A stretch of 44,994 nucleotides of DNA, taken from positions 1-44,994 of the forward strand of contig NW_021834701.1 in the NCBI RefSeq assembly GCF_006345805.1, given 5' to 3'. The position numbers and the translations under genes are program-made. This DNA is from Octopus sinensis. Lineage: Eukaryota. Positions 5,836 to 38,019 of the stretch are shown here, one piece after another (position 1 is the first letter of the stretch; each line of letters opens with the position of its first letter). A model generated the notes under the pieces. The model was given only the letters and a program-made list of their open reading frames with translations. It was not told the origin of the DNA and did no database searches.

Positions 5836-6476
5836 CACCTCGTGGCAGCTTAGGCAAGTATTTTCTATAGCCTTAGTCTTGAGCCGACCAATGCCTTGTG
5901 AGTAAATTCGATTGACGGAGATTGAAAGAATCCCGTTGTAAACGTGTTAGTGTGTGTGTGTGTGTGGGTGTGCGTGTGTGCGTGCGTGTGTGCGTGTGTG
6001 TGCGTGTGTGTGTGTGTGGTGCGTGTGTGTGTTTGGGTAGGTTGTGCTGTGTGTGTGTGTGGTGTGCGTGTGTGTGCGTGCGTGTGTATGTATGTGTGTG
6101 ATGGTGTGTGTCGTGCGTGTGCTGTGTGTGTGTGTGTGTGTGTGCGTTGTGTGTGTTGTGTGTGCGTGTGTGTGTGTTGTGTGTGCGTGTGTGTGCGTGC
6201 GTGTGTATGTATGTGTGTTATGTGTGGTGTGTGCGTGCGTGTGTAATGTGTGGTGTGTGGTGTGTGTGTGCGTGTGTGGTGTGGTGGTGTGTGTGTGTGC
6301 TGTGTGTGGTGTGTGTGCGTGTGTGTGTTCGTGCGTGTGTGTGTGGTATGTGTGTGTGTGGTGCTTGCGTGTGTGTGTGGTGTTGTGTTGGGGGTTGTGT
6401 GGTGTGTATGTGTGTGGTGTGGCGTGTGTGTGTTTATGTGTGTGGCGTGTGTGCGTGTGTGTGTGTGCGTGTGCGC

Positions 6477-6509
<33 letters not shown>

Positions 6510-6737
6510 TGTGTGGTGTGTGCGTGTGTGTTTTCTCCGCCACCGCTTGGCTGCTGGTGATAGCGTGTTTCCCCCCCCCCCCCCCGCCACCCGTAACGTA
6601 GCAGTTCGGCAAGAGTGTCCGATAGAATAAATACCAGGTTTTATAAACAAGTAAATTCTGGAGTCGAGTAAAAATCCTTCAGGGAAATGCCGCAGCATGG
6701 TCGCAGTTCAATCACTGAAACAAATAAAAGATAAAGG
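5836..6737 (+). mobile_element. SINE copy whose internal (GT) tract is expanded to ~590 bp
   Basis: SINE 5' part (CCGACCAATGCCTTGTGAGT) ends at ~5945, followed by degenerate (GT)n, then the SINE 3' part 6530-6737. Confidence 0.75.
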
Positions 6738-7343: not shown

Positions 7344-7756
7344 ACGTTCTTTGAATATGTTTCCAAAAAATGTTTAGAAAACCCCCATTTCTGCACCTCG
7401 CAGCCCCTGAGGTTTCAGGCAGAATGTTGGATAGTTGTGGGCGTTTGAATCCCGTGCTCTTACAGTATTGGGTCCTTATTCCAACCGGAAAAGACGGTAT
7501 TAGGTGATGCCAGGCTCTGTCTGCATATAAATTAGTTTGTTCGTCGTTGTCGACGATGATGAAGGACATAATATGGGGAAAAAAACCGGGGGTATGGTGT
7601 CTCCAGGCGTGACCCACCTGTCTGATGTGTGCTCGAAAGGCTCTGCTCAAAGTCAGGCTCTGGTGATTAACAGGGACGGAACACGAAGAGTTGGTTCGGG
7701 ACATGCAGACTTCGCATTTTCCTTTGTAACCCTAAAATTTCTGAGTTGCAACAGTA

Positions 7757-9862
7757 AAGAATTTTGGGGTTTGTGGCTGGGTAAAAAGAATTTTGAGGTT
7801 TGTGGCTGGGTAAAAAGAATTTTGAGGTTTGTGGCTGGGTAAAAAGAATTTTGAGGTTTGTGGCTGGGTAAAAAGAATTTTGAGGTTTGTGGCTGGGTAA
7901 AAAGAATTTTGAGGTTTGTGGCTGGGTAAAAAGAATTTTGACGTTTGTGGCTGGGTAAAAAGAATTTTGAGGTTTGTGGCTGGGTAAAAAGAATTTTGAC
8001 GTTTGTGGCTGGGTAAAAAGAATTTTGAGGTTTGTGGCTGGGTAAAAAGAATTTTGAGGTTTGTGGCTGGGTAAAAAGAATTTTGAGGTTTGTGGCTGGG
8101 TAAAAAGAATTTTGAGGTTTGTGGCTGGGTAAAAAGAATTTTGACGTTTGTGGCTGGGTAAAAAGAATTTTGAGGTTTGTGGCTCAGTAAAAAGAATTTT
8201 GATGTTTGTGGCTGGGTAAAAAGAATTTTGAGCTTTGTGGCTGGGTAAAAAGAATTTTGAGGTTTGTGGCTCAGTAAAAAGAATTTTGAGGTTTGTGGCT
8301 CAGTAAAAAGAATTTTGAGGTTTGTGGCTGGGTAAAAAGAATTTTGATGTTTGTGGCTCAGTAAAAAGAATTTTGATGTTTGTGGCTCAGTAAAAGAATT
8401 TTGAGGTTTTGGGCTGTGGTGGTAAAAAGAATTTTGAGGTTGTGGCTCAGTAAAAAGAATTTTGAGGTTTGTGGCTGGGTAAAAAGAATTTTGACGTTTG
8501 TGGCTGGGTAAAAAAGAATTTTGAGGTTTGTGGCTGGGTAAAAAAGAATTTTGATGTTTGTGGCTGAGTAAAAGATTTTGAGGTTGTGGCTGGGTAAAAG
8601 AATTTGAGGTTTGTGGCTCAGTAAAAAGAATTTTGATTTTTGTGGCTCAGTAAAAGAATTTTGAGGTTTGTGGCTGGGTAAAAGAATTTTGAGGTTTTTG
8701 GCTGGGTAAAAAGAATTTTGAGGTTTGTGGCTGGGTAAAAAGAATTTTGAGGTTTGTGGCTGGGTAAAAGAATTTTTTAGGTTTGTGGCTGGGTAAAAAG
8801 ATTTTGAGGTTTGTGGCTGGGTAAAAAGAATTTTGACGTTTTGGCTGGGTAAAAAGACTTTGAGGTTTGTGGCTGGGTAAAAAGAATTTTGAGGTTTGTG
8901 GCTGGGTAAAAAGAATTTTGAGGTTTGTGGCTGGGTAAAAAGAATTTTGAGGTTTGTGGCTGGGTAAAAAGAATTTTGACGTTTGTGGCTGGGTAAAAAG
9001 AATTTTGAGGTTTGTGGCTCAGTAAAAAATTTTGATTTTGGGCTGGGTAAAAGAATTTTGAGCTTTGTGGCTGGGTAAAAGAATTTTGAGGTTTGTGGCT
9101 CAGTAAAAAGAATTTTGAGGTTTGTGGCTCAGTAAAAAGAATTTTGACGTTTGTGGCTGGGTAAAAAGAATTTTGATGTTTGTGGCTCAGTAAAAAGAAT
9201 TTTGATGTTTGTGGCTCAGTAAAAGAATTTTGATGTTTGTGGCTCAGTAAAAAGAATTTTGATGTTTGTGGCTCAGTAAAAGAATTTTGAGGTTTGTGGC
9301 TGGGTAAAAAGAATTTTGAGGTTTGTGGCTCAGTAAAAAGAATTTTGACGTTTGTGGCTGGGTAAAAAGAATTTTGAGGTTTGTGGCTCAGTAAAAAGAA
9401 TTTTGAGGTTTGTGGCTGGGTAAAAAGAATTTTGACGTTTGTGGCTGGGTAAAAAGAATTTTGAGGTTTGTGGCTGGGTAAAAAGAATTTTGACGTTTGT
9501 GGCTGGGTAAAAAGAATTTTGAGATTTGTGGCTGGGTAAAAAGAATTTTGAGGTTTGTGGCTGGGTAAAAAGAATTTTGATGTTTGTGGCTAGGTAAAAA
9601 GAATTTTGAGGTTTGTGGCTGGGTAAAAAGAATTTTGAGATTTGTGGCTGGGTAAAAAGAATTTTGAGGTTTTTGGCTGGGTAAAAAGAATTTTGACGTT
9701 TGTGGCTGGGTAAAAAGAATTTTGAGGTTTGTGGCTGGGTAAAAAGAATTTTGAGATTTGTGGCTGGGTAAAAAGAATTTTGAGGTTTGTGGCTGGGTAA
9801 AAAGAATTTTGAGATTTGTGGCTGGGTAAAAAGAATTTTAAGGTTTGTGGCTGGGTAAAAAT
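7757..9862. repeat. 29-bp minisatellite, ~70 copies (consensus TTTTGAGGTTTGTGGCTGGGTAAAAAGAA)
   Basis: Directly visible tandem array with GAG/GAC/GAT and CTGGG/CTCAG variants; scattered 1-nt indels in the middle. Confidence 0.97.
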
Positions 9863-12368: not shown

Positions 12369-13251
12369 CATTGGTAAGAAAAGCTCTTGGACAACCAAGC
12401 CGCCTTCAATCCCGCAACCAATCAGCATCGCCGACCAATCAGGAGCAGCCAGCGTGTCCAATGTGACCAGATAACGATCACGTGCATCGTCTGGGCAAGG
12501 TCAGCAGGCTTGGGAAATGGCTGCCACATGAATTGATTGAAGCGAAAAAACAAGCAGGCGTCAGTGTCTGCTCTGGTGAAGCCGAAGATTCGATTGGTTG
12601 GAGTCAGTAATCACTAGGGATGAAAAGTGGGTTCTGTGCTCCAAGGTGAGGTGCAGACGATGCTGGGTGTAGCAAAGGTCAACAGGCAAAACCTTCGCCA
12701 AAAGGACCGCTTGTGGGAAAAGGTTATGATCACAGTTTGGTGGGATTGCCAAGGTGTGATCATGTTGGATCTTCTCCTACACGATACCACCGTTGACAAG
12801 GATGTCTACTGCGAACAAATCGACCGTCTAAAGATCGAACTGTCCAGAAAAGGCTCAAATTTGAAGATAACCTACCACCGAGACAACGCGCCAGCACATC
12901 GTGCAAAGACGACATCAGAGAAGCTGAAGGATGCGGGCCGAGAGATTATGGTGCACCCACCGTATTCTCCTGAGCTTGCCCCTTCTGACTGCCACTTATT
13001 CCCTGCCTTGCAACACGCGATTGGCGATACAGAGTTTGAAAACTAAGAAGAATTGAAATCGATCCTTTACGAATTTATTGATTCCAAACCTCGTGATTTC
13101 TGCATGATACGATTCAAAACTTTACCTGAAAGATGGCAAAAGGTGATCGATAACGAGGGTGATTACCTTTTGGATCGATTGCTCTTTGTTGTTGTTTTTT
13201 AATTAATAAAGTGATATGTTAAAAGTGTCCAAGAACTTTCTTACCAAACTG
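12369..13251 (+). mobile_element. Internally deleted mariner (D,D34D) transposon with TIRs, in TA repeats
   Basis: TIRs TTGGTAAGAAAAGCTCTTGGACA / TGTCCAAGAACTTTCTTACCAA; transposase motifs RDEKW, VWWD, HRDNAPAH, HPPYSPELAPSD, RWQKVIDNEGDY; stop at 13044; no N-terminal HTH region. Confidence 0.92.
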
Positions 13252-15083: not shown

Positions 15084-18000
15084 TTACATGCATGAGGTAT
15101 ACTCAGCCAGGACAGAGTTCTGTATGATAGCCGTCTCCTCGTCCACTGACGCCTCGTGTTCGTTAAGCTCTTGCCCACGGCAGGGACCCGGCTTCGGCAG
15201 TTCATATTGCAGCCTGTGCCAGAAGCAACGGCCCCGGGCAGTCAGGTACTCCCGGCGCTGCACCCGGCGTTTGATCTCATCATCCAGCGTCGAGATGTCC
15301 ACGTCACCGAAAAACACCAACACAACCCGATGCCGTTGCTGCTGCTGATGATGACGACGATGGTGATGATGATGATGATGGCGATAGTGGTGGCTGGGGG
15401 CATGATGACGATGATAACGATTGTGATGATGCTGATGAGGTTGGAGGCTATGAGGGTGATCCTGATGATGATAATGGTGATGCTGTTGTTGTTGTTGTAA
15501 GGGGAGCTGGTGTCGGTGGTGACTTACCCCTCCTTCCTCTTCGTCGACTTCTCCTTGCTCTCCTCTCCCTCGCTCTCCTCCGAACCTGCTCCCATGGCTG
15601 CCGTCGTCGTCATCGTCACCATCGTATACCCCTCCACTGCTTCCACCCACACCCATCAAAATCTGGCCCTTAGAGAGAGCAACGGCGACCCTTAGTGCCG
15701 CCATGCATGACGGGCTGGAGCCAGTGCCGCGGGACACGATAACCATTGTGCAGCGACACTGGCTGATGGCAGCAGCGAGGTTACCGGTGGGGCTGGTGGC
15801 GGTGGCGGCGGCGTTGTTGTTGTTGTTGTTGTTGTAGTTCGTAGTAGTAACTGTGGTGGCGTTGGTGGTGGCGCTGATGGCTGCAGGAAGGTCTGTGTTG
15901 TTGGAGGTGGTGGCGGTGGCACCTGTGGGAACAGTGGCATTGCTTGTGTCGTTACCGTAGTTGCTCTCCTTGGCGGCGGCGGCGGTGTTGGTGTTGGTGT
16001 TGGTGGTGGTGGTGGTGTCAGCAACGGAGTCAGCGGCGGCGGCGGCGGCGGCGCGGTGCAAACGCTGCGGGGAGGCGTTGTGGCAGCGTTTCCGGCCCTG
16101 GATCTACCCCTGATGATGGTGATGGCGTTGCGGTCTGGATAGAAAATCTTGAAAGCGTGCTTCCCGCTGTACTCGAGCCTGGGTAGCAAGGTCGATTCAA
16201 TCCATTTGCGGCAGTCCTCATCTCGCCGATCATAAACGAGAAAGATATCGAATGGCCTGCACGATCGATCTCTGTACCGACAACACTGCAACCCCAGCTT
16301 GACATAGATGCAGGCCACACATTCACGGCGATATCTTACGAAGAAAGCTAAACAAAATGCTAATATAATCACAGACATTATGAGGCCAATCACAACGATT
16401 TTCCTGGTTAAGGACGGCTGACACTTAAATGCAGACGGACGTTGGTCAACAACGATCTTGTGGTTACACCGTATGTCTCTCCTGTTACGCACAATTGTGT
16501 AATTGTAATTAAGCCAATGGTAGAACTGTTGATTGTCGCAAGCGCACTGCCATGGGTTTCGCTCCAGCTGGATTGACCGTAAGGTTCTAATATGGCTGAA
16601 TTCAGCCAGGGTATGTGCCTCGATCACACGGAACTTGTTACCGCTAAGATCAAGGTGTCTTAGGGATCGTAAACCATGGAATACATTTTCGTCAAAATGA
16701 TTCATGCTGTTATCGTTGAGGTAAAGTTCTCTGAGAAGGACGAGGTTTCCAAAGACAAACGCCGGTAAAGTCAACATCGAATTTTTGTTGAGTCGGAGGA
16801 CCCGCAGTTCTGGGAACCTCTTGAGGAAGTCCTCGCCGATGGAGCTGATTTGACTAGCGTTCAAGTACAGCTCTTGCGTCTGCATTCGTTTGCGTTCGGA
16901 CAAACTGGTCAGTTGACCGAGGGATGAGAAATCATTGCCATCCAGATACAGTTGGACCGTGCTGGATGCTATGACATCAGGCAAAGTGGTCAGTCTTCGA
17001 GAACAGAGCGTCCGCAGCGGTGAACCAGCCTCTTTACCTGCGAAGCAGTCACACTTCGTGCTGCATTCTATTTTTGATATGCAGAGGAATTCGTTTATGC
17101 TTGTAGTGAGAATGGGTTTCCGGTCGGGGCTGTGCTCAAATGTGCATTCTTCTACATGATACGTAGATTCAGAAAGTTTCTCCATTGCAAAACTTCGCTT
17201 CTGCTGCTGCCGTTGTTGTTGCTGTTGTTGTTGTTGCTCTTTAAGCCAACGCATTTCACATGAACAAACGATTGGGTTGCCATGTAGGAGTACAGACAAC
17301 CCCGAGGACATCACGACAAACGGTTTGAAACGAGTGAGGAAATTATCCCGCAAAGAGATGGCGGTCAGGTTCTCCAGGTTGTTGAAAGCAAACGGAATAA
17401 TTTCGGTTATGTTGCAACTGTCAAGAGAAAGCTTTCGGATGGCACCTCGTACAGGGTAAGTGGGTGGAAAGAGATAATCCCCTATCGATTTTATAGGATT
17501 GTGTGATATATTGAGATATTGCACACGCTGTAAGGCGGGGTATCTGAAAATGTCCGAGAGACGATGGATGTTGTTGTAGGCGAGGTTTATGGATGCTAAA
17601 CTTTCCAAGCCTTGAAAAACATTTTCTTCAAAATCAATATTTAATTTATTGTGGTCAAGCGAGAGGGTTTTTAGGTTAGATAAGCTAGAAAAGGCTCCAG
17701 GAATGGCCTCTTCAATGTGGTTGTGTCCTACTTGTAAATGTTCGAGGCGCCCCATATCATGAAACGCCTGGAAATGCAGTTTTCTTATGTAGTTCCATCT
17801 CATGTCAAGATGCTGTATCGATGTGTTCTTCAGACCGGCTGGAACTACTTGTAAAGAATTCCTGCTCAAGTTCAGAGTAAACGGGCATTGGGGGAAGGCC
17901 TGGTTTTCAATAGTTACAAGGTCGTTTTCGGATAAATCTAGTATTTGTAAATCAGCGAGGTCTTCAAATGCCCCACGTGACAACAGTGATATCATGTTTG

Positions 18001-19732
18001 CCCTAAGATTCAGTTCTTTCAATCTGGACAGTTTTCTGAATACCAAACGGTTAAAGAAACTGAGGAAGTTATGGGAAAGATCTAGATGCTCTAAGTTCTG
18101 AAGGTGAGCAAAGCTGTTGTTGCCCAGTGATGTGATAACATTAGAACTGAGGTCTAAAACCGTTAAAGACCCTAAATGCTGAAAGATAACATTGAAGTTC
18201 AATCCGTCCTCGAGACGGTTGCGACTCAAATTGAGGGACTGCAAAGCTGGGAACAAAGAAATGCTGTTCTTTTCGATGAGTTTGATTTTGTTCTGTGAGA
18301 GATCAAGTTGTTTTAGCAAAGGAAAGGCACTAAACATAGACGGAGTTAGGGACCTTAAATCGTTGGCGCTGAGGTTGAGGAGTTGCAGAGACGAAAGGTT
18401 GAGATGTTGTGGGATGTGATTAATGATGTTCGAAGATAAATCCAGATGCAGGAGTCTGGTGCAGTTGATCAGTGGTAAAGCGTGTAGGACGAAGATACGG
18501 TTGGATGAGATGTAAAGGTGACGAAGGGCTTCAAGTCCCTGGCATAACCGAGCTGGTAACTCGGACAAACGATTGAAAGAGAGATCTAAGGTCCTCAAGA
18601 CACGGCTGTTTTGGAAGGCAGACGAATGTATATGGTTAATAGCATTACTGGAGAGATTGAGGAATATGAGAGACGATGCAAGTGTCGTTAAGGCCTCAGT
18701 AGACAGAGTTTCGATGCTGTTCTGACTAATGTCAATGTAACGGATTGGTGGCGACACCCGGTGGCACAAAAATGCAATTGATGGATACCCGGACAAGTGA
18801 AGGTTACTTAAGTCTAAGTAAGTCAAGTTTTTCAGACCACAAAACACTCCATCCGGTAGTATATCAATAGGATTGTGAGAGAGAGAAATGTATTTTAAAT
18901 TGGCTAAGCCGACAAAAAACTTGCGGGGTACAGCTCTGATGCTATTTGAACCCAAATCCACTGCAGCCAATGATTTCAAGTGATGCAACGATATCGACGT
19001 CAAATCAGTCACCTGACAAAAAATAAAATTCTGGGGTTGCACTGGTTTGTGGCTGGGTGAAAATTCAACATTTTTCTTAAGGACTGTTTGAGACCTACTT
19101 TCAAGCTGCTGGTTCTTATCACTCCATGGTTCCGACTGGTGACCATCCTGTAGATGTGGACGACTGCTTGCTGCTAAACCAATCCTGGATCCACCATCAG
19201 GCTGTAATTCTAAATCTATATCCATATCCAGCACATCTAGTGACCTTGTGTTGGGTTTTTGTTCATTGTTCACTGTCGGGGTTAATTCAAGGGGCCCGTC
19301 GGAGACATAGGCATTGTTTAAAACAGAAAAAATAGGATTTCCAAATTTGCATAGGCACTTGGACCGGTGAGGGTTGGACCGTGTAGGATTGTTTCTGCAG
19401 TGGATATATATGTAGGAGATATTAGAAGGTGAGGGTTGCCCCTGGGGGGTGGCACTAGGGGTACTGGTTGGGAAAGGCTGGTCAGAGGCACAAATCGAGA
19501 CGTTGGCGTTAATATCGTACAAACACTCGCTGGCAGGTTGGTAGCGGAAAGATAAAACGGTTCGAGCTGCACCGGACAACCGGAAAGGGAAGCTGCGGTT
19601 TCGCTGCTCCTGTGCGTGTGAGATGCAGATGAGGGCAAAGGTGATGAGGAAGACGAAACCAGCGACTGAGATGGTGTTTGTTGAAGTAGGAGTAGCGAGA
19701 GTGGTATGAGTGATAGCGGGAGTGGAAACCAT
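15084..19732 (-). CDS. Toll-like receptor, multiple-cysteine-cluster (protostome-type), single coding exon, one apparent 1-nt frameshift at 16053
   Basis: ORF 15692..19759 gives a signal-like hydrophobic stretch (VAGFVFLITFALICISHA), ~23 LRRs, LRRCT (NPIVCSC), LRRNT (CSTKCDC), ~5 LRRs, LRRCT (NPWQCAC), TM helix (IVVIGLIMSVIILAFCLAFFV) and TIR box 1 (FDIFLVYD). ORF 15084..16061 supplies the rest of the TIR (NLAAAISQCRCTMVIVS; VVLVFFGD; FWHRLQYELP). The track start at 19759 is TTG; the first ATG is at 19732 (AGGATGG context). 19732-15084 is 4649 nt, +1 = 1550 codons. Confidence 0.92.
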
Positions 19733-31520: not shown

Positions 31521-31619
31521 GAATCACACCACACACACACACACAGAGTGGATGTGTGTCTCTCTTACCTTGTGAACGGTCGTATTATCCGAATGGTGCA
31601 ATTCACTGCAATAAAACTA

Positions 31620-32135
31620 CTTTGGTTAGCGGTGGCGGTGACGGGGGGGTGGTGGCGGTGGTGGTGGAGAGAAAGCTGGGGGTGGTGGTGGGGGTGGCGG
31701 TGACGGGTGGTGGTGGTGGAGAGAAAGCTTGGGGGGGGAGCCACTGTGTGGGGGGAGGGGGTGACGGCGGCGGTGGTGGTTCTGCCTTCACTGCAGTCTT
31801 CGTTGTACTGGCTGCGGTGGTGGTGAGGGTTGCGGTGGTAGTAGTTGTCGTGGTGGTGGTGGGGGGAGTCAGTGGTGGTGGCGGTGTTGCTAATGGCGGT
31901 GGTGGTGGTGGTGGTTGTGGTGGTTATGGTGGTAGTAGTTGTGGTGGTGGTGGTGGTGGTTGTGGTGGTGGTGGTGGTGGTTGTGGTGGTAGTAGTTGTC
32001 GTGGTGGTGGTGGTGGTTGTGGTGGTGGTGGTGGTGGTGGTGGTTGTGGTGGTGGTGGTGGTGGTGGTGGTGGTGGTTGTAGTAGTTGTCGTGGTGATGA
32101 TGGTGGTGGTGGTGGTGGTGGTGGTTCGGTGGTGG
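31620..32135. repeat. (GGT)n-rich low-complexity tract
   Basis: Directly visible; source of the poly-Thr/Val/Gly ORFs. Confidence 0.92.
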
Positions 32136-32409
32136 TATTGATTCAAATGTTATTTATAGATATGTATTGGTGCAGTGTATATATGCGGCATGCGTGTGGT
32201 GTGTGTGTGTGTGTGTGTGTGTTCGCTGCTGTCACTTCACAACCGGTGTTGTTATGTTTACGTTCCTAATTTAGCAGTGTTTGGCAAAAGAGGGCGATAG
32301 GGGACATGGCAGACTTCAAAAAATTTAGTCGATTTGTTACAACTAGAACCGTCCGAGCCGGTGCTCCAGCATGGCCGCAGTCAAACGACTGAAACGAGTA
32401 AAAGAAATT

Positions 32410-33610
<1,201 letters not shown>

Positions 33611-34809
33611 GAGTGCGTACAAACTGGGATGTTTATATACAGTAGTTTTTTATGCAATGTCCGTACGATTGTCATTGTTACTGAAATCCAGGTTAGACCT
33701 GTTTGTGCAGAACTATGCCGAAAGACGTTCCAACTGCGACCATCCCGTTTGTGTAGTGGACACCGCTCTTTTCTTTGTAAGGACATAAAACTTGGGAGCG
33801 ACGGGTGGTTTAGCTGTTATTTCTAGCATGCCATGTGCTCACATGGACAATCGCCTGTTTTTGCGCAAGCGGTGTCTATGTATGTATCTGTGCATGTGCG
33901 CGCGCGTGTAAGTGTGTGTGTGTGTGTGTGTTGTATGTGTGTATGCGTACGTATATGTGTAGGTATGTGTGTTTACGTTAATGTATACGTGTGTGTATGT
34001 GTGCGCACGTCTTCTCTCTCTCTCTCTCTGTATACGTACATACATATATACTTATATATAGATGTATGTTATGTCTGTGAGCATGTGTGTAACGTGTGTA
34101 GGCATATACATTTGTGTGTGTATATATATATATTACATACAAACACACACATACATATATGTATGCATATACATTTGTGTGTGTGTGTATATATATATAT
34201 ATTAATAATTAATTAATTTTGTATATATATATAATTAATAATTAATTAATTTTGCCCTCAATTGTTGAAATTATAATTAATCTCCCTCTGATTAATGCTT
34301 CGGATTTTACCGAAATAAGCATAGGGTTTGATGATTTTAACCCACGCTGGTGGAAAGGGGAGAACAGAGATTCTTCGCTTGCTTATTTGAATTTGTTGGC
34401 ACTGTTAGTTGGGAGCAGATCTTCGAAAGGGTATGTTCTTATTTTCAGTGTTTCCAAATCCAAACCAAGGAATTTCTGAGCCGATGATAGAAATGTTGTT
34501 TTGACTAATCTTGAAACGTACGTTCTCGAATAACCTTAGCATTTGATTTTTCGATGTCCTTACCCCCAAACTTTTGTGAGTTGAATTAAGCAAACACTAT
34601 ATATGAGAGAGATTTTCTTTAAGTATTAGAAATAGCTTTAAAAAAGTTTTTTAGCTGCTATTTCTAATGAGTTCAGTATGCGGCAAAGTAATTTATTTTA
34701 CTAAGCCCTTTTATATATGTAATAATTTGAATTCGCCTTGAATGGTCCCTTTGCTAATGAACACTTGGTGAAATTGATTAATAATTAATAATTTTGCCCT
34801 CAATTGTTG

Positions 34810-35322: not shown

Positions 35323-36125
35323 CTAGCAGTATCGCCCGGCGTTGCTCGGGTTTGTAAGGGAAATAACTATATAAGCATTTTTAGAGAGTTATAGCCAAAA
35401 AGTTGCAAAAAATACATTAAAAATGGAAAAAAATGATGGTAAATTTTTTTTTAAATCGTTGACTCATCGTAGACATTTTTAGAGAGTTACTTCCCTTATA
35501 TAATAGCGAAAAAATGTATTAAAATGGAAAAGAAATGATGGTAAATTATTTTTAAAATCGTAGACTCAACGTAGACGCGCGCTAATAGCCAGACGGGCTC
35601 GATATGAATCACGACTATAAGATACCCGGTTTTGGTTAAACTGCACCGCAAAATGTGGGAGGAGTTAGGAATCTAAATCGAAGGGGACAGACACTCACAC
35701 AACTAGAGTTTTATATATATAGACTAGCAGTATCGCCCGGCGTTGCTCGGGTTTGTAAGGGAAATAACTATAAAGCATTTTTAGAGAGTTATAGCCAAAA
35801 AATAGTTTTAAAAATGTATTAAAAATGGAAAAAAAATTATGGTAATTTTTTTTTTAAATCGTAGACTCATCGTAGATTTTTAGAGAGTTACTTCCCTTTA
35901 TTTAAAAAAATAGATTAAAATGGAAAAAAATTATGGTAAATTATTTTTAAAATCGTAGACTCTTCGTAGACGCGCGCTAATACCCAGAAGGGCTCGATAT
36001 GAATCACACGATATAAAATACCCGGTTTTGGTTAAACTGCACCGCAAAATGTGGGAGTAGTAGTAGTTAGGAATCTAAATCGAAGGGGACAGACAGCACC
36101 ACAACCTCACTTTTATATATAAAGA
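35323..36125 (-). mobile_element. Head-to-tail dimer of a non-autonomous Helitron (35323-35723, 35724-36125)
   Basis: Each unit has 5' TC-TATATATA and a 3' hairpin CCCGAGCAACGCCGGG + CTAG; the junction is CTAG|TC; the dimer sits between A and T. Confidence 0.85.
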
Positions 36126-36139
36126 TATAAAGATATGTT

Positions 36140-36352
36140 TGAGTGTGTTTGATTGTGTGCGTGTGTGTATGTATGTTAGGGTGCGTGTGCGTATGTTTGT
36201 GTATGTGTGTCCCTGTATGACGACTGCCTGTGTGTGTATGTGTGCGTGTGTGTGTGTGAGTGTAGGTGTGTGAGTGTGAGTGTATGTATGTGTGTGTGAG
36301 TGTATGTGTGTGAGTGTATGTGTGTGTGAGTGTATGTATGTGTGTGTGTGAG

Positions 36353-36384
<32 letters not shown>

Positions 36385-36639
36385 AGTGTATGTGTGTGTC
36401 TGTGTGTGAGTGTGAGTGTATGTGCGTGTGTGAGTGTGTGTGTGTGTGTGAGTGTATTGTGTGTGTGAGTGTATGTATGTGACTGTGTGTGTATGTGTGA
36501 GTGTGTGTGTGAGTGTATGTGTGTGTGTGTGTGTGAGTGTATGTATGTGTATGTGTGTGTGAGTGTATGTGTGTGTGTGAGTGTATGTATGTGTGAGTGT
36601 GTGAGTGTATGCGTGTGTGTGAGTGTATGTATGTGACTG

Positions 36640-36675
<36 letters not shown>

Positions 36676-37711
36676 AGTGTGTATGTGTGTGTGTGCGTTA
36701 ATACGTGGGCGTCTGTAGGAAATAGAAATAGCTTGAGAGAGAAAATAAAGGAAAAGGAGCAGAGAAAGAGAGAGAAGGGGAAAGAGAGGAGGCACAAGGT
36801 GCAAATAGTGTTTGTCAGAGGTGAAAGGTGAAAGGTGAAAGGTGAAAGGTCATCAGACAAAACGCCAGGACGAATGTGGAAGTCTGGTATTTTTGTTCCT
36901 TTAACTACTTTCCCGTCAAACGCTCCCTCTCCTTTCTCTCTCTCTCTCCCTCTTCTCTCTCTCTCTCCCTCCTTTCTCTCTCTCTCTCCCCCTCCTTTCT
37001 CTCTCTCTCTCTCTCTCGCTCCCTCTCTCTCTCCCTCCTTTCTATCTGTCTCTGTATCTCTCTTTCCCTCCCGCTCCTTTCTCTCTCTTAGGCTCCTTTC
37101 TCTCTCTCTCTCTCTCTCTCTCTTTCCTGATCTTTTGTCTCTCTTCCGCTGCTTTCTCTCTCTCTCTCTCTCTCTCTTTCCTGATCTTTTGTCTCTCTTC
37201 CGCTGCTTTCTCTCTCTCTCTCTCTCTCTCTTTCCTGATCTTTTGTCTCTCTTCCGCTGCTTTCTCTCTCTCTCCCTCCCTCTCCGTCTCTTTATCTCTC
37301 TCTCTCTCTCGCTTCTTCCTCTCTGTCTCTTTATCTCTCTCACTCTCTCCCTCTCGCTGCTTTCTCTCTCTGTCTGTCTCTTTATCTCTCTCACTCTCTC
37401 CCTCTCGCTCCTTTCTATCTCTGTCTGTCTCTTTATCTCTCTCTCCCTCCAGGTCCTTTCTCTCTCTCCTTCCTCTCTGTCTCTTTATCTCTCTCTCTTC
37501 CCGCTCCATTCTCTCTGTCTCTCGCTCCATTCTCTCTGTCTCTCTCGCACTCCTTTCTCTCTCTCTCCCGTTCCTTTCTCTCTCCCCCGCTCCTTTCTCT
37601 CTCTCTCTCTCCCGCACCTTTCTCTCTCTCTCTCCCGCTCCTTTCTCTCTCTCTCTCTCTCCCGCTCCTTTCTCTCTCTCTCCCACTTCTTTCTCTATCT
37701 CCCCCGCTCCA

Positions 37712-37743
<32 letters not shown>

Positions 37744-37748
37744 GCCGC

Positions 37749-37780
<32 letters not shown>

Positions 37781-37800
37781 TCCGCTCCTTTCTCTCTGTC
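36140..37800. repeat. (GT)-rich tract 36140-36700 and (CT)-rich tract 36930-37800
   Basis: Directly visible. Confidence 0.93.
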
Positions 37801-38019
37801 TGTTTATCTTCAACATGAAATTGACTATTATATATGTAAATTGATTTTTTTTTCTATGTTCACACACTCCATTTTGTTCGTTTGTTTGTCCAGCAAAATG
37901 AAAGTAAATGGTTTCAATGGAAGCTATTGTTTTTCCTATCTATGTAAAATCGAAATTCTGTCTTTTCCTTTCTCCGGAAAAATGAAAGTACTTGGTTCAA
38001 GGGAAGCTACTGCGCTATT

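What the first reader, a model, noticed from the sequence alone, without database searches (positions are those of the whole stretch)
15084..16270. TIR domain with BB loop replaced and two ~110-aa low-complexity inserts
Seen: after FKIFYPDRNA (where TLRs usually have RDFxPG) comes ~113 aa of Ala/Thr/Asn repeats (~16124-15787). The domain resumes NLAAAISQCRCTMVIVS, with SPSCMAAL where TIRs usually have WCxxE. A second ~105-aa Gly/Asp/His/Gln insert (~15655-15336) precedes VVLVFFGD and FWHRLQYELP. Established: the BB loop mediates MyD88-type adaptor binding and the helix-C Glu is the catalytic residue of NADase TIRs. Inference: a non-canonical, decoy or condensate-forming receptor whose core strands and helices remain in frame around microsatellite-derived loops.
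Basis: partly seen in the sequence, partly recalled or inferred. Interest (0 to 1): 0.7.

Follow-up and report, generated by a model that had tools for sequence, protein, structure and literature searches.

The report
Octopus Toll receptor with looped-out TIR
This is the cytoplasmic signalling (TIR) domain of an octopus Toll-like receptor that carries two roughly 110-residue disordered, repeat-derived loops kept for at least 34 million years; in this Octopus sinensis scaffold a one-base gap in a GCC repeat also breaks the reading frame, most likely an assembly error.

Summary
The window is a whole 44,994-bp Octopus sinensis scaffold with one real gene, a multiple-cysteine-cluster Toll-like receptor on the minus strand (ATG 19732, stop 15084).

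- **Observation.** FKIFYPDRNA is in the ectodomain frame; everything after window 16053 is shifted by one base. One C is missing from a (GCC)n run.
- **Orthologues.** O. vulgaris (1556 aa) and O. bimaculoides (1528 aa) are uninterrupted single-exon ORFs with both inserts in frame.
- **Selection.** dN/dS is 0.064 for the TIR core, 0.29 for the inserts and 0.18 for the ectodomain, so the gene is not dead.
- **Structure.** AlphaFold gives a confident TIR core. The inserts are disordered, between βB and αB and in the CD loop.
- **Distribution.** None of 23 insert-less orthogroup sequences (cuttlefish, bivalves, a chiton, unnamed clusters) has RDxxPG. The odd BB loop therefore predates the inserts.
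- **Function.** The decoy and condensate ideas remain untested.

Verdict: a real, constrained, octopus-lineage variant of a known receptor type. The frame break is probably an assembly artefact that produced truncated RefSeq models. Moderate interest.

The parts
15084..19732 (-). Whole Toll-like receptor coding region as assembled, from the ATG (MVSTPAI) to the stop after ...AEYTSCM. It is a single exon of 4649 nt, which is not a multiple of 3.
   Evidence: It is 93% identical in protein to O. bimaculoides XP_014788392 and differs from the O. vulgaris CAI9742777 coding sequence by 6 substitutions and 3 indels.
16403..19732 (-). Signal peptide plus leucine-rich-repeat ectodomain, with an internal LRRCT (17281-17237), LRRNT (17083-17033) and a membrane-proximal LRRCT (16558-16511). 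This is the multiple-cysteine-cluster (P-type) architecture.
   Evidence: Pfam LRR_8 E 1.8e-101 in 13 stretches. The cysteine-cluster motifs were read directly from the sequence.
16337..16402 (-). Transmembrane helix KIVVIGLIMSVIILAFCLAFFV.
   Evidence: A 22-residue hydrophobic stretch. AlphaFold models it as a helix with pLDDT 77-94.
16124..16252 (-). TIR core segment 1 (βA FDIFLVYD, αA, βB FKIFYPDRNA), in the ectodomain frame.
   Evidence: It shows no nonsynonymous change in 43 codons between O. vulgaris and O. bimaculoides.
15783..16123 (-). Insert 1, about 113 aa and rich in Thr/Ala/Asn, between βB/BB loop and αB. It is built from (GCC)n, (ACC/AAC)n and (AAC)n repeats and contains the frame break.
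   Evidence: The corresponding octopus-only alignment blocks (28 + 79 aa in O. vulgaris) are absent from 23 orthogroup relatives. pLDDT is about 30.
16033..16055 (-). Site of the frame break. The sequence reads ACC GC|GCC GCC..., so one base is missing from the first GCC unit of the (GCC)n run. Against O. vulgaris this appears as a 4-nt gap (one base plus one repeat unit).
   Evidence: DNA alignment, indel list, frame coordinates, sequence.
15651..15782 (-). TIR core segment 2 (αB NLAAAISQC, βC CTMVIVS, αC SPSCMAALRVAVALSKG), in the shifted frame.
15330..15650 (-). Insert 2, 107 aa, in the CD loop. Its first half is rich in acidic residues and Gly, and its second half is rich in His, Gln and Arg. 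It is built from (GAC)n, (CAA/CAG)n and (CAT/CAC)n repeats.
   Evidence: It is absent from 23 relatives. pLDDT is about 35. dN/dS is 0.18.
15195..15329 (-). TIR core segment 3 (βD RVVLVFFGD, αD, βE YLTA, αE FWHRLQYELP). It carries the orthogroup signature Y(L/I)TARxRxxWxRLxYELP.
   Evidence: Together with the tail it shows 1 nonsynonymous against 10 synonymous changes in 81 codons.
15084..15194 (-). C-terminal tail with a conserved acidic, di-hydrophobic motif (EETAII, 15140-15123), followed by the stop codon.
   Evidence: The motif is conserved across the orthogroup, for example ESDVIL, ENDVII and ETDIII.

Best explanation
**What it is.** This is the cytoplasmic end of a single-exon, multiple-cysteine-cluster Toll-like receptor of Octopus sinensis. 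The receptor belongs to a mollusc-wide orthogroup. Databases variously name its members 'Tollo', 'TLR6', 'TLR7' or 'slit-like'. The TIR domain of this orthogroup was already non-canonical: it has PDR... where other TIRs have RDxxPG. It also has a signature Y(I/L)TARxRxxWxRLxYELP and an acidic tail.

**What happened in octopuses.** After the split from cuttlefish, and before O. bimaculoides diverged about 34 Mya, trinucleotide microsatellites expanded inside two surface loops. One is the BB-loop/αB junction and the other is the CD loop. This added two translated, intrinsically disordered segments of about 100-115 aa. The five-stranded α/β TIR core stayed folded and strongly constrained.

**How it probably works (inferred).**

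- The receptor is functional.
- It probably does not nucleate MyD88-type assemblies through a canonical BB loop.
- It more likely uses the conserved βE/αE face and the tail.
- The inserts are tolerated loop expansions that are now themselves under moderate constraint.

**The frame break.** The one-base deficit in (GCC)n in this scaffold is most likely a long-read assembly error, or at most a very young allele. It is not a feature of the gene. It explains why the O. sinensis protein models stop inside the TIR.
For: **Identity of the window.** An O. sinensis RefSeq protein lies on a contig of exactly 44,994 bp.

**Intact orthologues.**

- O. vulgaris L001:3001-7671 is a continuous 1556-codon ORF.
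- O. bimaculoides L002:3001-7587 translates directly to the 1528-aa protein.
- Both keep both inserts in frame.

**The frame break is local and young.**

- The window differs from the O. vulgaris coding sequence by 6 substitutions and indels of 15, 4 and 3 nt.
- Only the 4-nt gap in (GCC)n breaks the frame.

**Selection, O. vulgaris against O. bimaculoides.**

| Region | dN/dS | Changes |
|---|---|---|
| TIR core | 0.064 | 21 synonymous, 5 nonsynonymous; p = 1e-9 |
| Inserts | 0.29 | 34 of 63 changes nonsynonymous against 78% expected; p = 2e-5 |
| Ectodomain | 0.18 | 110 synonymous, 75 nonsynonymous; p = 5e-27 |

The 10 gaps in the protein alignment of the two intact ORFs are whole codons, so no indel between them breaks the frame.

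**Fold.**

- With the inserts included, the core has pLDDT 70-90 and the inserts about 30-35.
- The trimmed core with 22 sequences gives pLDDT 77.8 and pTM 0.70, in the order βA-αA-βB-αB-βC-αC-βD-αD-βE-αE.
- Foldseek finds 28 PDB hits at E <= 1e-3, all TIR domains. Examples are IL-18Rβ at 1.9e-6 and TLR6 with TM-score 0.73.
- Sequence evidence: Pfam TIR 26.6 bits without the inserts, and a PDB profile hit to TLR7 at 9e-10.

**Lineage specificity.**

- About 18 orthogroup representatives score far above ordinary TLRs.
- A 25-sequence alignment shows the extra blocks only in Octopus.
- Named members include scallops, Mytilus, Pinctada, Potamilus, the chiton Liolophura and a cuttlefish.

**Splicing.**

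- O. vulgaris has no in-frame GT..AG pair that could excise insert 1.
- The O. vulgaris annotation, built with Iso-Seq and RNA-seq, keeps both inserts in its full-length model.

**Dates.** The divergence times of 34 and 2.5 Mya are from PMC10700109.
Against: - No reads were available. 'Assembly error' is therefore inferred from the type of lesion (a 1-nt loss in a GC-rich repeat), the near-identity to an intact sister species, and the fragmented state of the O. sinensis assembly (13,516 scaffolds).
- No transcript or peptide evidence that the inserts are translated was examined directly.
- Trinucleotide repeats change by multiples of three on their own. Frame preservation across the inserts is therefore weaker evidence than it looks. 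One alternative frame is also open across insert 1.
- Only two independent octopus lineages were sampled.
- dN/dS on low-complexity sequence depends on the alignment.
- The signalling inference (no canonical MyD88 coupling) rests on missing motifs, not on any assay.
Confidence: 0.7

Rival explanations
1. The frameshift is real in O. sinensis. The gene then encodes a receptor with only βA-αA-βB of the TIR followed by a Pro/Thr-rich tail. That would be a signalling-dead or decoy receptor, or a young pseudogene.
For: The assembly reads this way. Two NCBI protein records follow the ectodomain frame to the stop at 15692, one of 1346 aa and one of 1336 aa (XP_036355784.1), and neither is flagged as low quality. 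O. vulgaris annotates a TIR-less isoform, so a receptor without a TIR is biologically plausible.
Against: The 325 codons downstream of the break are open. They differ from intact O. vulgaris by only 4 substitutions (3 nonsynonymous, 1 synonymous) and one 3-nt indel. The lesion is a 1-nt loss inside a GC-rich trinucleotide run, which is typical of long-read consensus errors rather than of unit-wise slippage. The scaffold is a small unplaced piece of a fragmented assembly. With only 2.5 My of divergence, however, lack of decay cannot exclude a recent real mutation.
Confidence: 0.15
2. One or both inserts are removed from the mature mRNA as in-frame exonic introns (exitrons). The expressed protein would then have a compact TIR.
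For: Insert 2 is bracketed in both O. vulgaris and O. bimaculoides by an in-frame GT (GGT|GTGGGT, window 15650) and by AG sites in the (CAG)n run (exon would resume at about 15344-15338). Splicing there would give ...KGQILMG|QQQRHRVVL. A GGG|GTAAGT consensus donor also lies inside insert 2 in the window.
Against: O. vulgaris has no in-frame GT..AG pair for insert 1, and the two pairs in O. bimaculoides are not conserved. dN/dS in the inserts is 0.29, and 0.18 in insert 2, far below the neutral value expected of introns (p = 2e-5). The three O. bimaculoides RefSeq accessions listed for this protein (XP_014788392-94) share one identical 1528-aa sequence, and the O. vulgaris full-length model keeps the inserts. 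GT..AG pairs of this kind are expected by chance in a CAG-rich stretch.
Confidence: 0.1
3. The inserts are selected functional modules. The BB-loop insert would block canonical adaptor docking, making a decoy. The blocky acidic and His/Arg/Gln-rich insert 2 would drive clustering, condensates, or metal- or pH-dependent regulation.
For: The non-repetitive parts of the inserts are about 80-88% identical over 34 My (by eye), with dN/dS 0.18-0.43. Insert 2 has a strongly segregated charge pattern. The inserts sit on the BB surface, which established structural work on MyD88 and MAL filaments shows to be used for TIR-TIR assembly.
Against: No functional data exist. Insert-less orthologues already lack the canonical BB loop, so the insert is not needed to explain non-canonical signalling. 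Repeat lengths drift between species. Low-complexity loop expansions are common and often neutral.
Confidence: 0.2
4. The TIR is a decaying relic, and only the ectodomain is still functional in octopuses.
For: Pfam fails to detect a TIR in the full-length O. vulgaris protein. The RDxxPG and WxxxE motifs are lost.
Against: The TIR core has dN/dS 0.064, lower than the ectodomain's 0.18. AlphaFold gives a confident TIR fold. The ORF is intact in two lineages separated by 34 My.
Confidence: 0.03

Closest known systems
Orthologous mollusc mcc-type TLRs: a cuttlefish transcript and Acanthosepion pharaonis CAE1173594; scallop 'TLR7' and 'slit-like'; Mytilus 'slit homolog 1-like'; Pinctada; Potamilus; chiton Liolophura 'Tollo'
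   Same: They share the ectodomain architecture, the length outside the inserts (about 1200 aa) and a TIR with PDR in place of RDxxPG. They also share the Y(I/L)TARxRxxWxRLxYELP signature and the acidic [DE]xxx[IL][IL]-like tail. Profile E-values range from 1e-102 to 1e-51.
   Different: None has the two inserts of about 100 aa. Cuttlefish and many bivalves keep the αC Trp, and several bivalves keep the Glu. Octopus has lost both.
Canonical MyD88-coupled TIR domains of vertebrate TLRs (TLR1, 2, 6, 10) and MyD88
   Same: The α/β fold is the same. Foldseek gives E 2e-6 to 5e-3 with target-normalised TM-scores up to 0.73-0.74, and the sequence profile gives E 9e-10 to 2e-5. The box 1 (FDxFxxY) and box 3 (FW) equivalents are present.
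   Different: There is no RDxxPG BB loop and no conserved BB-loop proline. About 113 disordered residues are inserted at that surface and 107 in the CD loop.
Insect Toll-6, Toll-7 and Toll-8 (Tollo) type receptors
   Same: These are mcc-type ectodomains. Several arthropod hits in this search carry His/Gln-rich low-complexity sequence. Annotation pipelines gave the octopus and chiton proteins the name 'Tollo'.
   Different: In the arthropod proteins seen here the low-complexity sequence forms a C-terminal extension after an intact canonical TIR. It is not placed inside the TIR. Orthology to Tollo was not tested, and the name comes from automated best-hit transfer.
NADase TIR domains (SARM1, plant TNL TIRs, bacterial TIRs)
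   Same: The fold is the same.
   Different: The catalytic αC glutamate is absent in Octopus, which reads SPSCMAAL there. NADase activity is therefore not expected.

Membership tests
Toll-like receptor, multiple-cysteine-cluster (P-type) | N-terminal signal peptide and leucine-rich-repeat ectodomain | tested here: met
   Pfam LRR_8 E 1.8e-101 in 13 stretches. A hydrophobic leader, VAGFVFLITFALICISHA, follows the first ATG (read by eye).
Toll-like receptor, multiple-cysteine-cluster (P-type) | More than one cysteine cluster, meaning an internal LRRCT/LRRNT as well as the membrane-proximal LRRCT | tested here: met
   The motifs CSCEMRWL (17281-17237), CSTKCDC (17083-17033) and WQCACDNQQF (16558-16511) were read directly. 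No dedicated LRRCT or LRRNT model was reported by Pfam.
Toll-like receptor, multiple-cysteine-cluster (P-type) | Single transmembrane helix between the ectodomain and the TIR | tested here: met
   The helix is at 16402-16337 and AlphaFold models it with pLDDT 77-94.
Toll-like receptor, multiple-cysteine-cluster (P-type) | Complete cytoplasmic TIR domain in one reading frame | tested here: inconclusive
   It is not met in the window as assembled, because of the frame break at 16054-16053. It is met in the O. vulgaris and O. bimaculoides orthologues and after a one-base repair.
Canonical adaptor-coupling TIR (MyD88 type) | BB loop with RDxxPG and its conserved proline | tested here: not met
   Octopus reads FYPDRNAITIIRGRS followed by the insert. 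None of the 25 aligned orthogroup sequences has RDxxPG.
NADase TIR | Catalytic glutamate in αC (the WxxxE context) | tested here: not met
   Octopus has SSPSCMAAL and cuttlefish has NSWSSMCL. The Glu survives only in some bivalves.
Mollusc 'Tollo/TLR7-like' orthogroup | The signature Y(I/L)TARxRxxWxRLxYELP, PDR after βB, and an acidic [DE]xxx[IL][IL]-like tail. Members score far above other TLRs with the orthogroup profile. | tested here: met
   All three motifs are present. Members score 1e-102 to 1e-51, against about 1e-25 for ordinary TLRs.
Spliced-out insert (intron or exitron) | A conserved in-frame GT..AG pair bracketing the insert, and transcripts that lack it | tested here: inconclusive
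   Insert 1 has no such pair in O. vulgaris. Insert 2 has pairs in both species. Transcript usage cannot be tested with these tools, and the published gene models retain both inserts.

The most novel reading that the evidence does not exclude
The two disordered loops are not passengers but selected modules. On this reading they have turned an already non-canonical TIR into a different kind of signalling platform. The BB-surface insert would prevent head-to-tail TIR filament assembly. The acidic and His/Arg/Gln-rich CD-loop insert would mediate clustering or metal- or pH-dependent regulation. A transcript-supported TIR-less isoform would tune the output. This would be an octopus-specific rewiring of a Toll receptor that domain-based TLR censuses can miss, because Pfam no longer detects its TIR.
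Probability: 0.2. Interest if true: 0.65.

Novelty: new variant of a known kind. Interest (0 to 1): 0.4.

Why it matters
**For TIR biology.** The BB loop is the best-known functional surface of the domain. A TIR that has tolerated about 113 disordered residues at that spot for at least 34 My, plus 107 in the CD loop, while its core evolves at dN/dS 0.06, is a natural experiment. It shows which TIR surfaces this receptor family can do without.

**For annotation.**
- A one-base assembly deficit has produced truncated O. sinensis protein models.
- Pfam does not detect the TIR in the intact octopus proteins.
- Censuses that require LRR, a transmembrane helix and a TIR can therefore miscount cephalopod TLRs. 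Cephalopods are reported to have the smallest mollusc repertoires (PMC10279657).

**For genome evolution.** It is a clear case of coding microsatellites building long disordered loops inside a folded domain.

If the inserts turn out to be neutral passengers, the finding is an ordinary curiosity.

Tried and rejected
**Searches that failed.**
- Two of the three large homology searches were wasted.
- An alignment query that included the inserts returned 8000 candidates chosen by low-complexity words, none significant.
- An insert-free alignment query returned a single protein and missed even the known orthologues.
- No further octopods (Amphioctopus, Hapalochlaena, Callistoctopus) and no octopus transcript contigs could therefore be sampled.

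**Weak or unavailable evidence.**
- Foldseek on the model with the inserts gave only non-significant hits (best E 0.2), although nearly all were TIR domains. The trimmed-core model was needed.
- The 2024 paper on 14 O. sinensis TLRs (Chen et al., Fish Shellfish Immunol) is not held, so I could not check whether this gene is described there.
- Literature searches for TIR domains with BB-loop or low-complexity insertions found nothing relevant.

**Ideas rejected.**
- A canonical intron spanning insert 1 that would restore the frame in the window. The GGG|GTAGAT donor and CCACCAG| acceptor I checked by hand leave the wrong phase. O. vulgaris has no in-frame GT..AG pair for insert 1.
- A pseudogene.
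- A second TLR copy or other genes in the window. The only other coding remnant is a mariner-type transposase fragment.

**Other.** The 3' exon of the TIR-less isoform is not in the window. It would lie about 360 nt beyond position 1.
Full report
**What is in the window.** The minus strand between 19732 and 15084 carries the only real gene on this 44,994-bp sequence.

- A 1355-codon ORF (19759-15692) encodes a signal peptide and a large leucine-rich-repeat ectodomain (Pfam LRR_8 E 1.8e-101).
- The ectodomain has an internal LRRCT/LRRNT pair, and a transmembrane helix follows at 16402-16337.
- The start of a TIR domain follows: FDIFLVYD at 16252 and FKIFYPDRNA at 16153-16124.
- A second ORF in another frame (16061-15084) encodes the rest of the TIR.
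- An exact-sequence look-up places an O. sinensis RefSeq protein ('toll-like receptor 7 isoform X2', XP_036355784.1) on a contig of exactly 44,994 bp. The window is therefore a whole unplaced O. sinensis scaffold.

**Checking the observation.** The two inserts are as described.

- Insert 1 is 113 aa, rich in Thr/Ala/Asn, at 16123-15783.
- Insert 2 is 107 aa, rich in His/Gly/Gln/Arg/Asp, at 15650-15330.
- Both sit on trinucleotide microsatellites.

- FKIFYPDRNA...PPRSVCT ends at 16055 in the ectodomain frame.
- AAAAAAADSVAD... begins at 16052 in a different frame.
- Two orphan bases lie between them.
- From ATG to stop is 4649 nt, which is 2 modulo 3.
- Read in the ectodomain frame, the protein continues as a Pro/Thr-rich tail and stops at 15692, inside the TIR. 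That is what the O. sinensis NCBI proteins of 1346 and 1336 aa contain.

**Orthologues settle most questions.**

- O. bimaculoides XP_014788392 (1528 aa; L002:3001-7587) and O. vulgaris CAI9742777 (1556 aa; L001:3001-7671) are uninterrupted single-exon ORFs. Both inserts are in frame in both.
- A three-way DNA alignment shows that the window differs from O. vulgaris at the (GCC)n run by a 4-nt gap. The window reads ACC GC GCC GCC..., which is one repeat unit fewer plus one missing base.
- Over the whole coding sequence the two differ by only 6 substitutions and indels of 15, 4 and 3 nt.
- The two species diverged about 2.5 Mya, and O. bimaculoides split off about 34 Mya (PMC10700109).
- A single-base loss inside a GC-rich trinucleotide run, on a small unplaced scaffold of a 13,516-scaffold assembly, looks like a consensus error. 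With so little divergence, a very recent real mutation cannot be excluded without reads.

**Is the domain alive?** Nei-Gojobori estimates between the two intact species are as follows.

| Region | dN/dS | Detail |
|---|---|---|
| Ectodomain | 0.18 | |
| TIR core segments | 0.064 | 21 synonymous, 5 nonsynonymous changes in 168 codons |
| Alignable parts of the inserts | 0.29 | insert 2 alone: 0.18 |

- Against neutral expectation, the deficits of nonsynonymous change have p = 1e-9 for the core and p = 2e-5 for the inserts.
- The 10 gaps in the protein alignment of the two intact ORFs are whole codons, so none of the indels breaks the frame.
- The inserts behave like constrained coding sequence rather than introns.
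- Two caveats apply. Trinucleotide repeats change by threes anyway, and one alternative frame is open across insert 1.

**Is it a TIR, and where are the inserts?**

- With the inserts removed, the three core segments pass Pfam's TIR threshold (26.6 bits).
- An orthogroup profile hits TLR7, TLR15/TLR2, TLR1, TLR6, SIGIRR and MyD88 TIR chains at E 9e-10 to 2e-5.
- AlphaFold on the O. vulgaris transmembrane-to-C-terminus fragment gives core elements at pLDDT 70-90. Two long stretches, residues 96-211 and 256-362, have pLDDT about 30-35.
- Foldseek on that model ranks TIR domains first, but not significantly.
- A trimmed-core model with a 22-sequence alignment reaches pLDDT 77.8 and pTM 0.70. It has the canonical order βA-αA-βB-αB-βC-αC-βD-αD-βE-αE.
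- That model matches 28 PDB chains at E <= 1e-3, all TIR domains. Target-normalised TM-scores reach 0.73-0.74 for TLR6, TRR-2 and MyD88.
- Insert 1 lies between βB/BB loop and αB. Insert 2 lies between αC and βD, in the CD loop.

**What is ancestral and what is octopus-specific?** A profile search of 1.84 billion cluster representatives finds about 18 proteins that score far above ordinary TLRs (1e-102 to 1e-51, against about 1e-25).

- Named members are scallops, Mytilus, Pinctada, Potamilus, the chiton Liolophura ('Tollo') and a cuttlefish. The cuttlefish record is a 4.2-kb Logan contig (292-nt 5' and 299-nt 3' flanks around a complete 1205-codon ORF), probably a transcript, that clusters with Acanthosepion pharaonis.
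- In a 25-sequence alignment, only the two Octopus rows have extra blocks. These are 28 + 79 and 108 aa in O. vulgaris, and 24 + 76 and 98 aa in O. bimaculoides.
- None of the 25 has RDxxPG. Most read PDR or a variant after βB.
- All share Y(I/L)TARxRxxWxRLxYELP and an acidic tail ending in a [DE]xxx[IL][IL]-like motif.
- The 'replaced BB loop' is therefore an old property of the orthogroup, not a consequence of the insert.
- The αC Trp is kept in cuttlefish and many bivalves but lost in Octopus. The αC Glu is kept only in some bivalves.

**Splicing.**

- O. vulgaris has no in-frame GT..AG pair that could excise insert 1, and the two pairs in O. bimaculoides are not shared.
- Insert 2 is bracketed in both species by an in-frame GT at its first codon and by AGs in the (CAG)n run. 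An exitron is therefore formally possible but unsupported.
- The O. vulgaris annotation was built with Iso-Seq, RNA-seq and PASA isoform updates. It lists the full-length form with both inserts.
- It also lists a 971-aa isoform that ends ...FFVTRY. That isoform uses a donor just after the transmembrane helix (window 16339, TTCTTC|GTAAGA) and an acceptor 15 kb downstream (L001:21666). That acceptor falls about 360 nt beyond the end of this scaffold.
- No annotated isoform removes only the inserts.

**Mechanism.**

- *Shown:* a constrained TIR fold; two disordered, repeat-derived, lineage-specific loop inserts; an ancestrally non-canonical BB loop; loss of the NADase-type Glu.
- *Inferred:* the receptor is functional but unlikely to nucleate MyD88-type head-to-tail TIR assemblies through its BB surface. 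It more likely relies on the invariant βE/αE face and the conserved tail. The inserts began as tolerated microsatellite expansions in surface loops and are now moderately constrained.
- *Untested:* whether the inserts have acquired a function such as a decoy role, clustering, or metal or pH sensing.

**Novelty and score.**

- The gene models are public. I found no description of the insert-bearing TIR in the searchable literature. The one paper devoted to O. sinensis TLRs could not be read.
- Pfam does not detect the TIR in the intact O. vulgaris protein. The stored Pfam annotations for the O. bimaculoides protein list none either. Domain-based censuses may therefore overlook this gene.
- I rate it a new variant of a known kind, of moderate interest (0.4). 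It is real and constrained, but low-complexity loop expansion is a common process and no function is shown.

Noticed in passing
window 16055-15692 (minus strand): The O. sinensis NCBI protein models (1346 aa and XP_036355784.1 at 1336 aa) read the ectodomain frame through the repeat. This gives a Pro/Thr-rich tail of about 120 aa and a stop inside the TIR. It is probably a mis-annotation caused by the one-base deficit. The 1336-aa form also lacks 10 aa (30 nt) inside the (ACC/AAC)n run, with no GT..AG there, which suggests a repeat-length allele in the supporting transcripts.
   Followed up: partly
window 16340/16339 (donor TTCTTC|GTAAGA); acceptor at L001:21666, about 360 nt beyond window position 1: O. 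vulgaris annotates a 971-aa isoform (CAI9742778.1) that ends ...FFVTRY just after the transmembrane helix. It uses this donor and a terminal exon 15 kb downstream, giving a TIR-less LRR-plus-transmembrane form. The donor is conserved in the window, but the acceptor exon lies off the scaffold.
   Followed up: partly
window 15140-15123 (EETAII) within the tail 15194-15087: An acidic tail with a [DE]xxx[IL][IL]-like motif is conserved from chiton and bivalves to cephalopods (ESDVIL, ENDVII, ETDIII, EETAII). It resembles an acidic dileucine sorting signal and might direct endosomal trafficking.
   Followed up: no
window 17242-17198 and about 19046: A third coding microsatellite, KEQQQQQQQQRQQQK, sits between the internal LRRCT and LRRNT. 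It is 5 aa shorter in O. bimaculoides. The window also lacks 15 nt (QDSSP) that both O. vulgaris and O. bimaculoides have in the N-terminal low-complexity part of the ectodomain.
   Followed up: partly
whole protein (O. vulgaris P0122; O. bimaculoides P0001): Pfam reports no TIR domain at E <= 0.01 in the intact full-length O. vulgaris protein, and the stored Pfam annotations for O. bimaculoides list none. The cuttlefish orthologue scores 45.7 bits. TLR censuses that require a detected TIR could classify this gene as LRR-only.
   Followed up: partly
window 15650 and 15344-15338: An in-frame GT at the first codon of insert 2 and AG sites in the (CAG)n run are conserved in O. vulgaris and O. bimaculoides. 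They could define an in-frame exitron of about 310 nt. A GGG|GTAAGT consensus donor lies at about 15530. No evidence of use was found.
   Followed up: partly
window 12627-13046 (plus strand): A mariner/Tc1-type transposase fragment lies downstream of the gene (Pfam Transposase_1 E 8.6e-14, DDE_3 E 1.4e-6).
   Followed up: yes
window about 7756-9861: There is a long minisatellite. BLAST against the O. vulgaris locus gives a ladder of alignments offset by 29 nt. The window is otherwise dense in di- and trinucleotide microsatellites, for example 5865-6700, 31560-33790 and 36070-37870.
   Followed up: no
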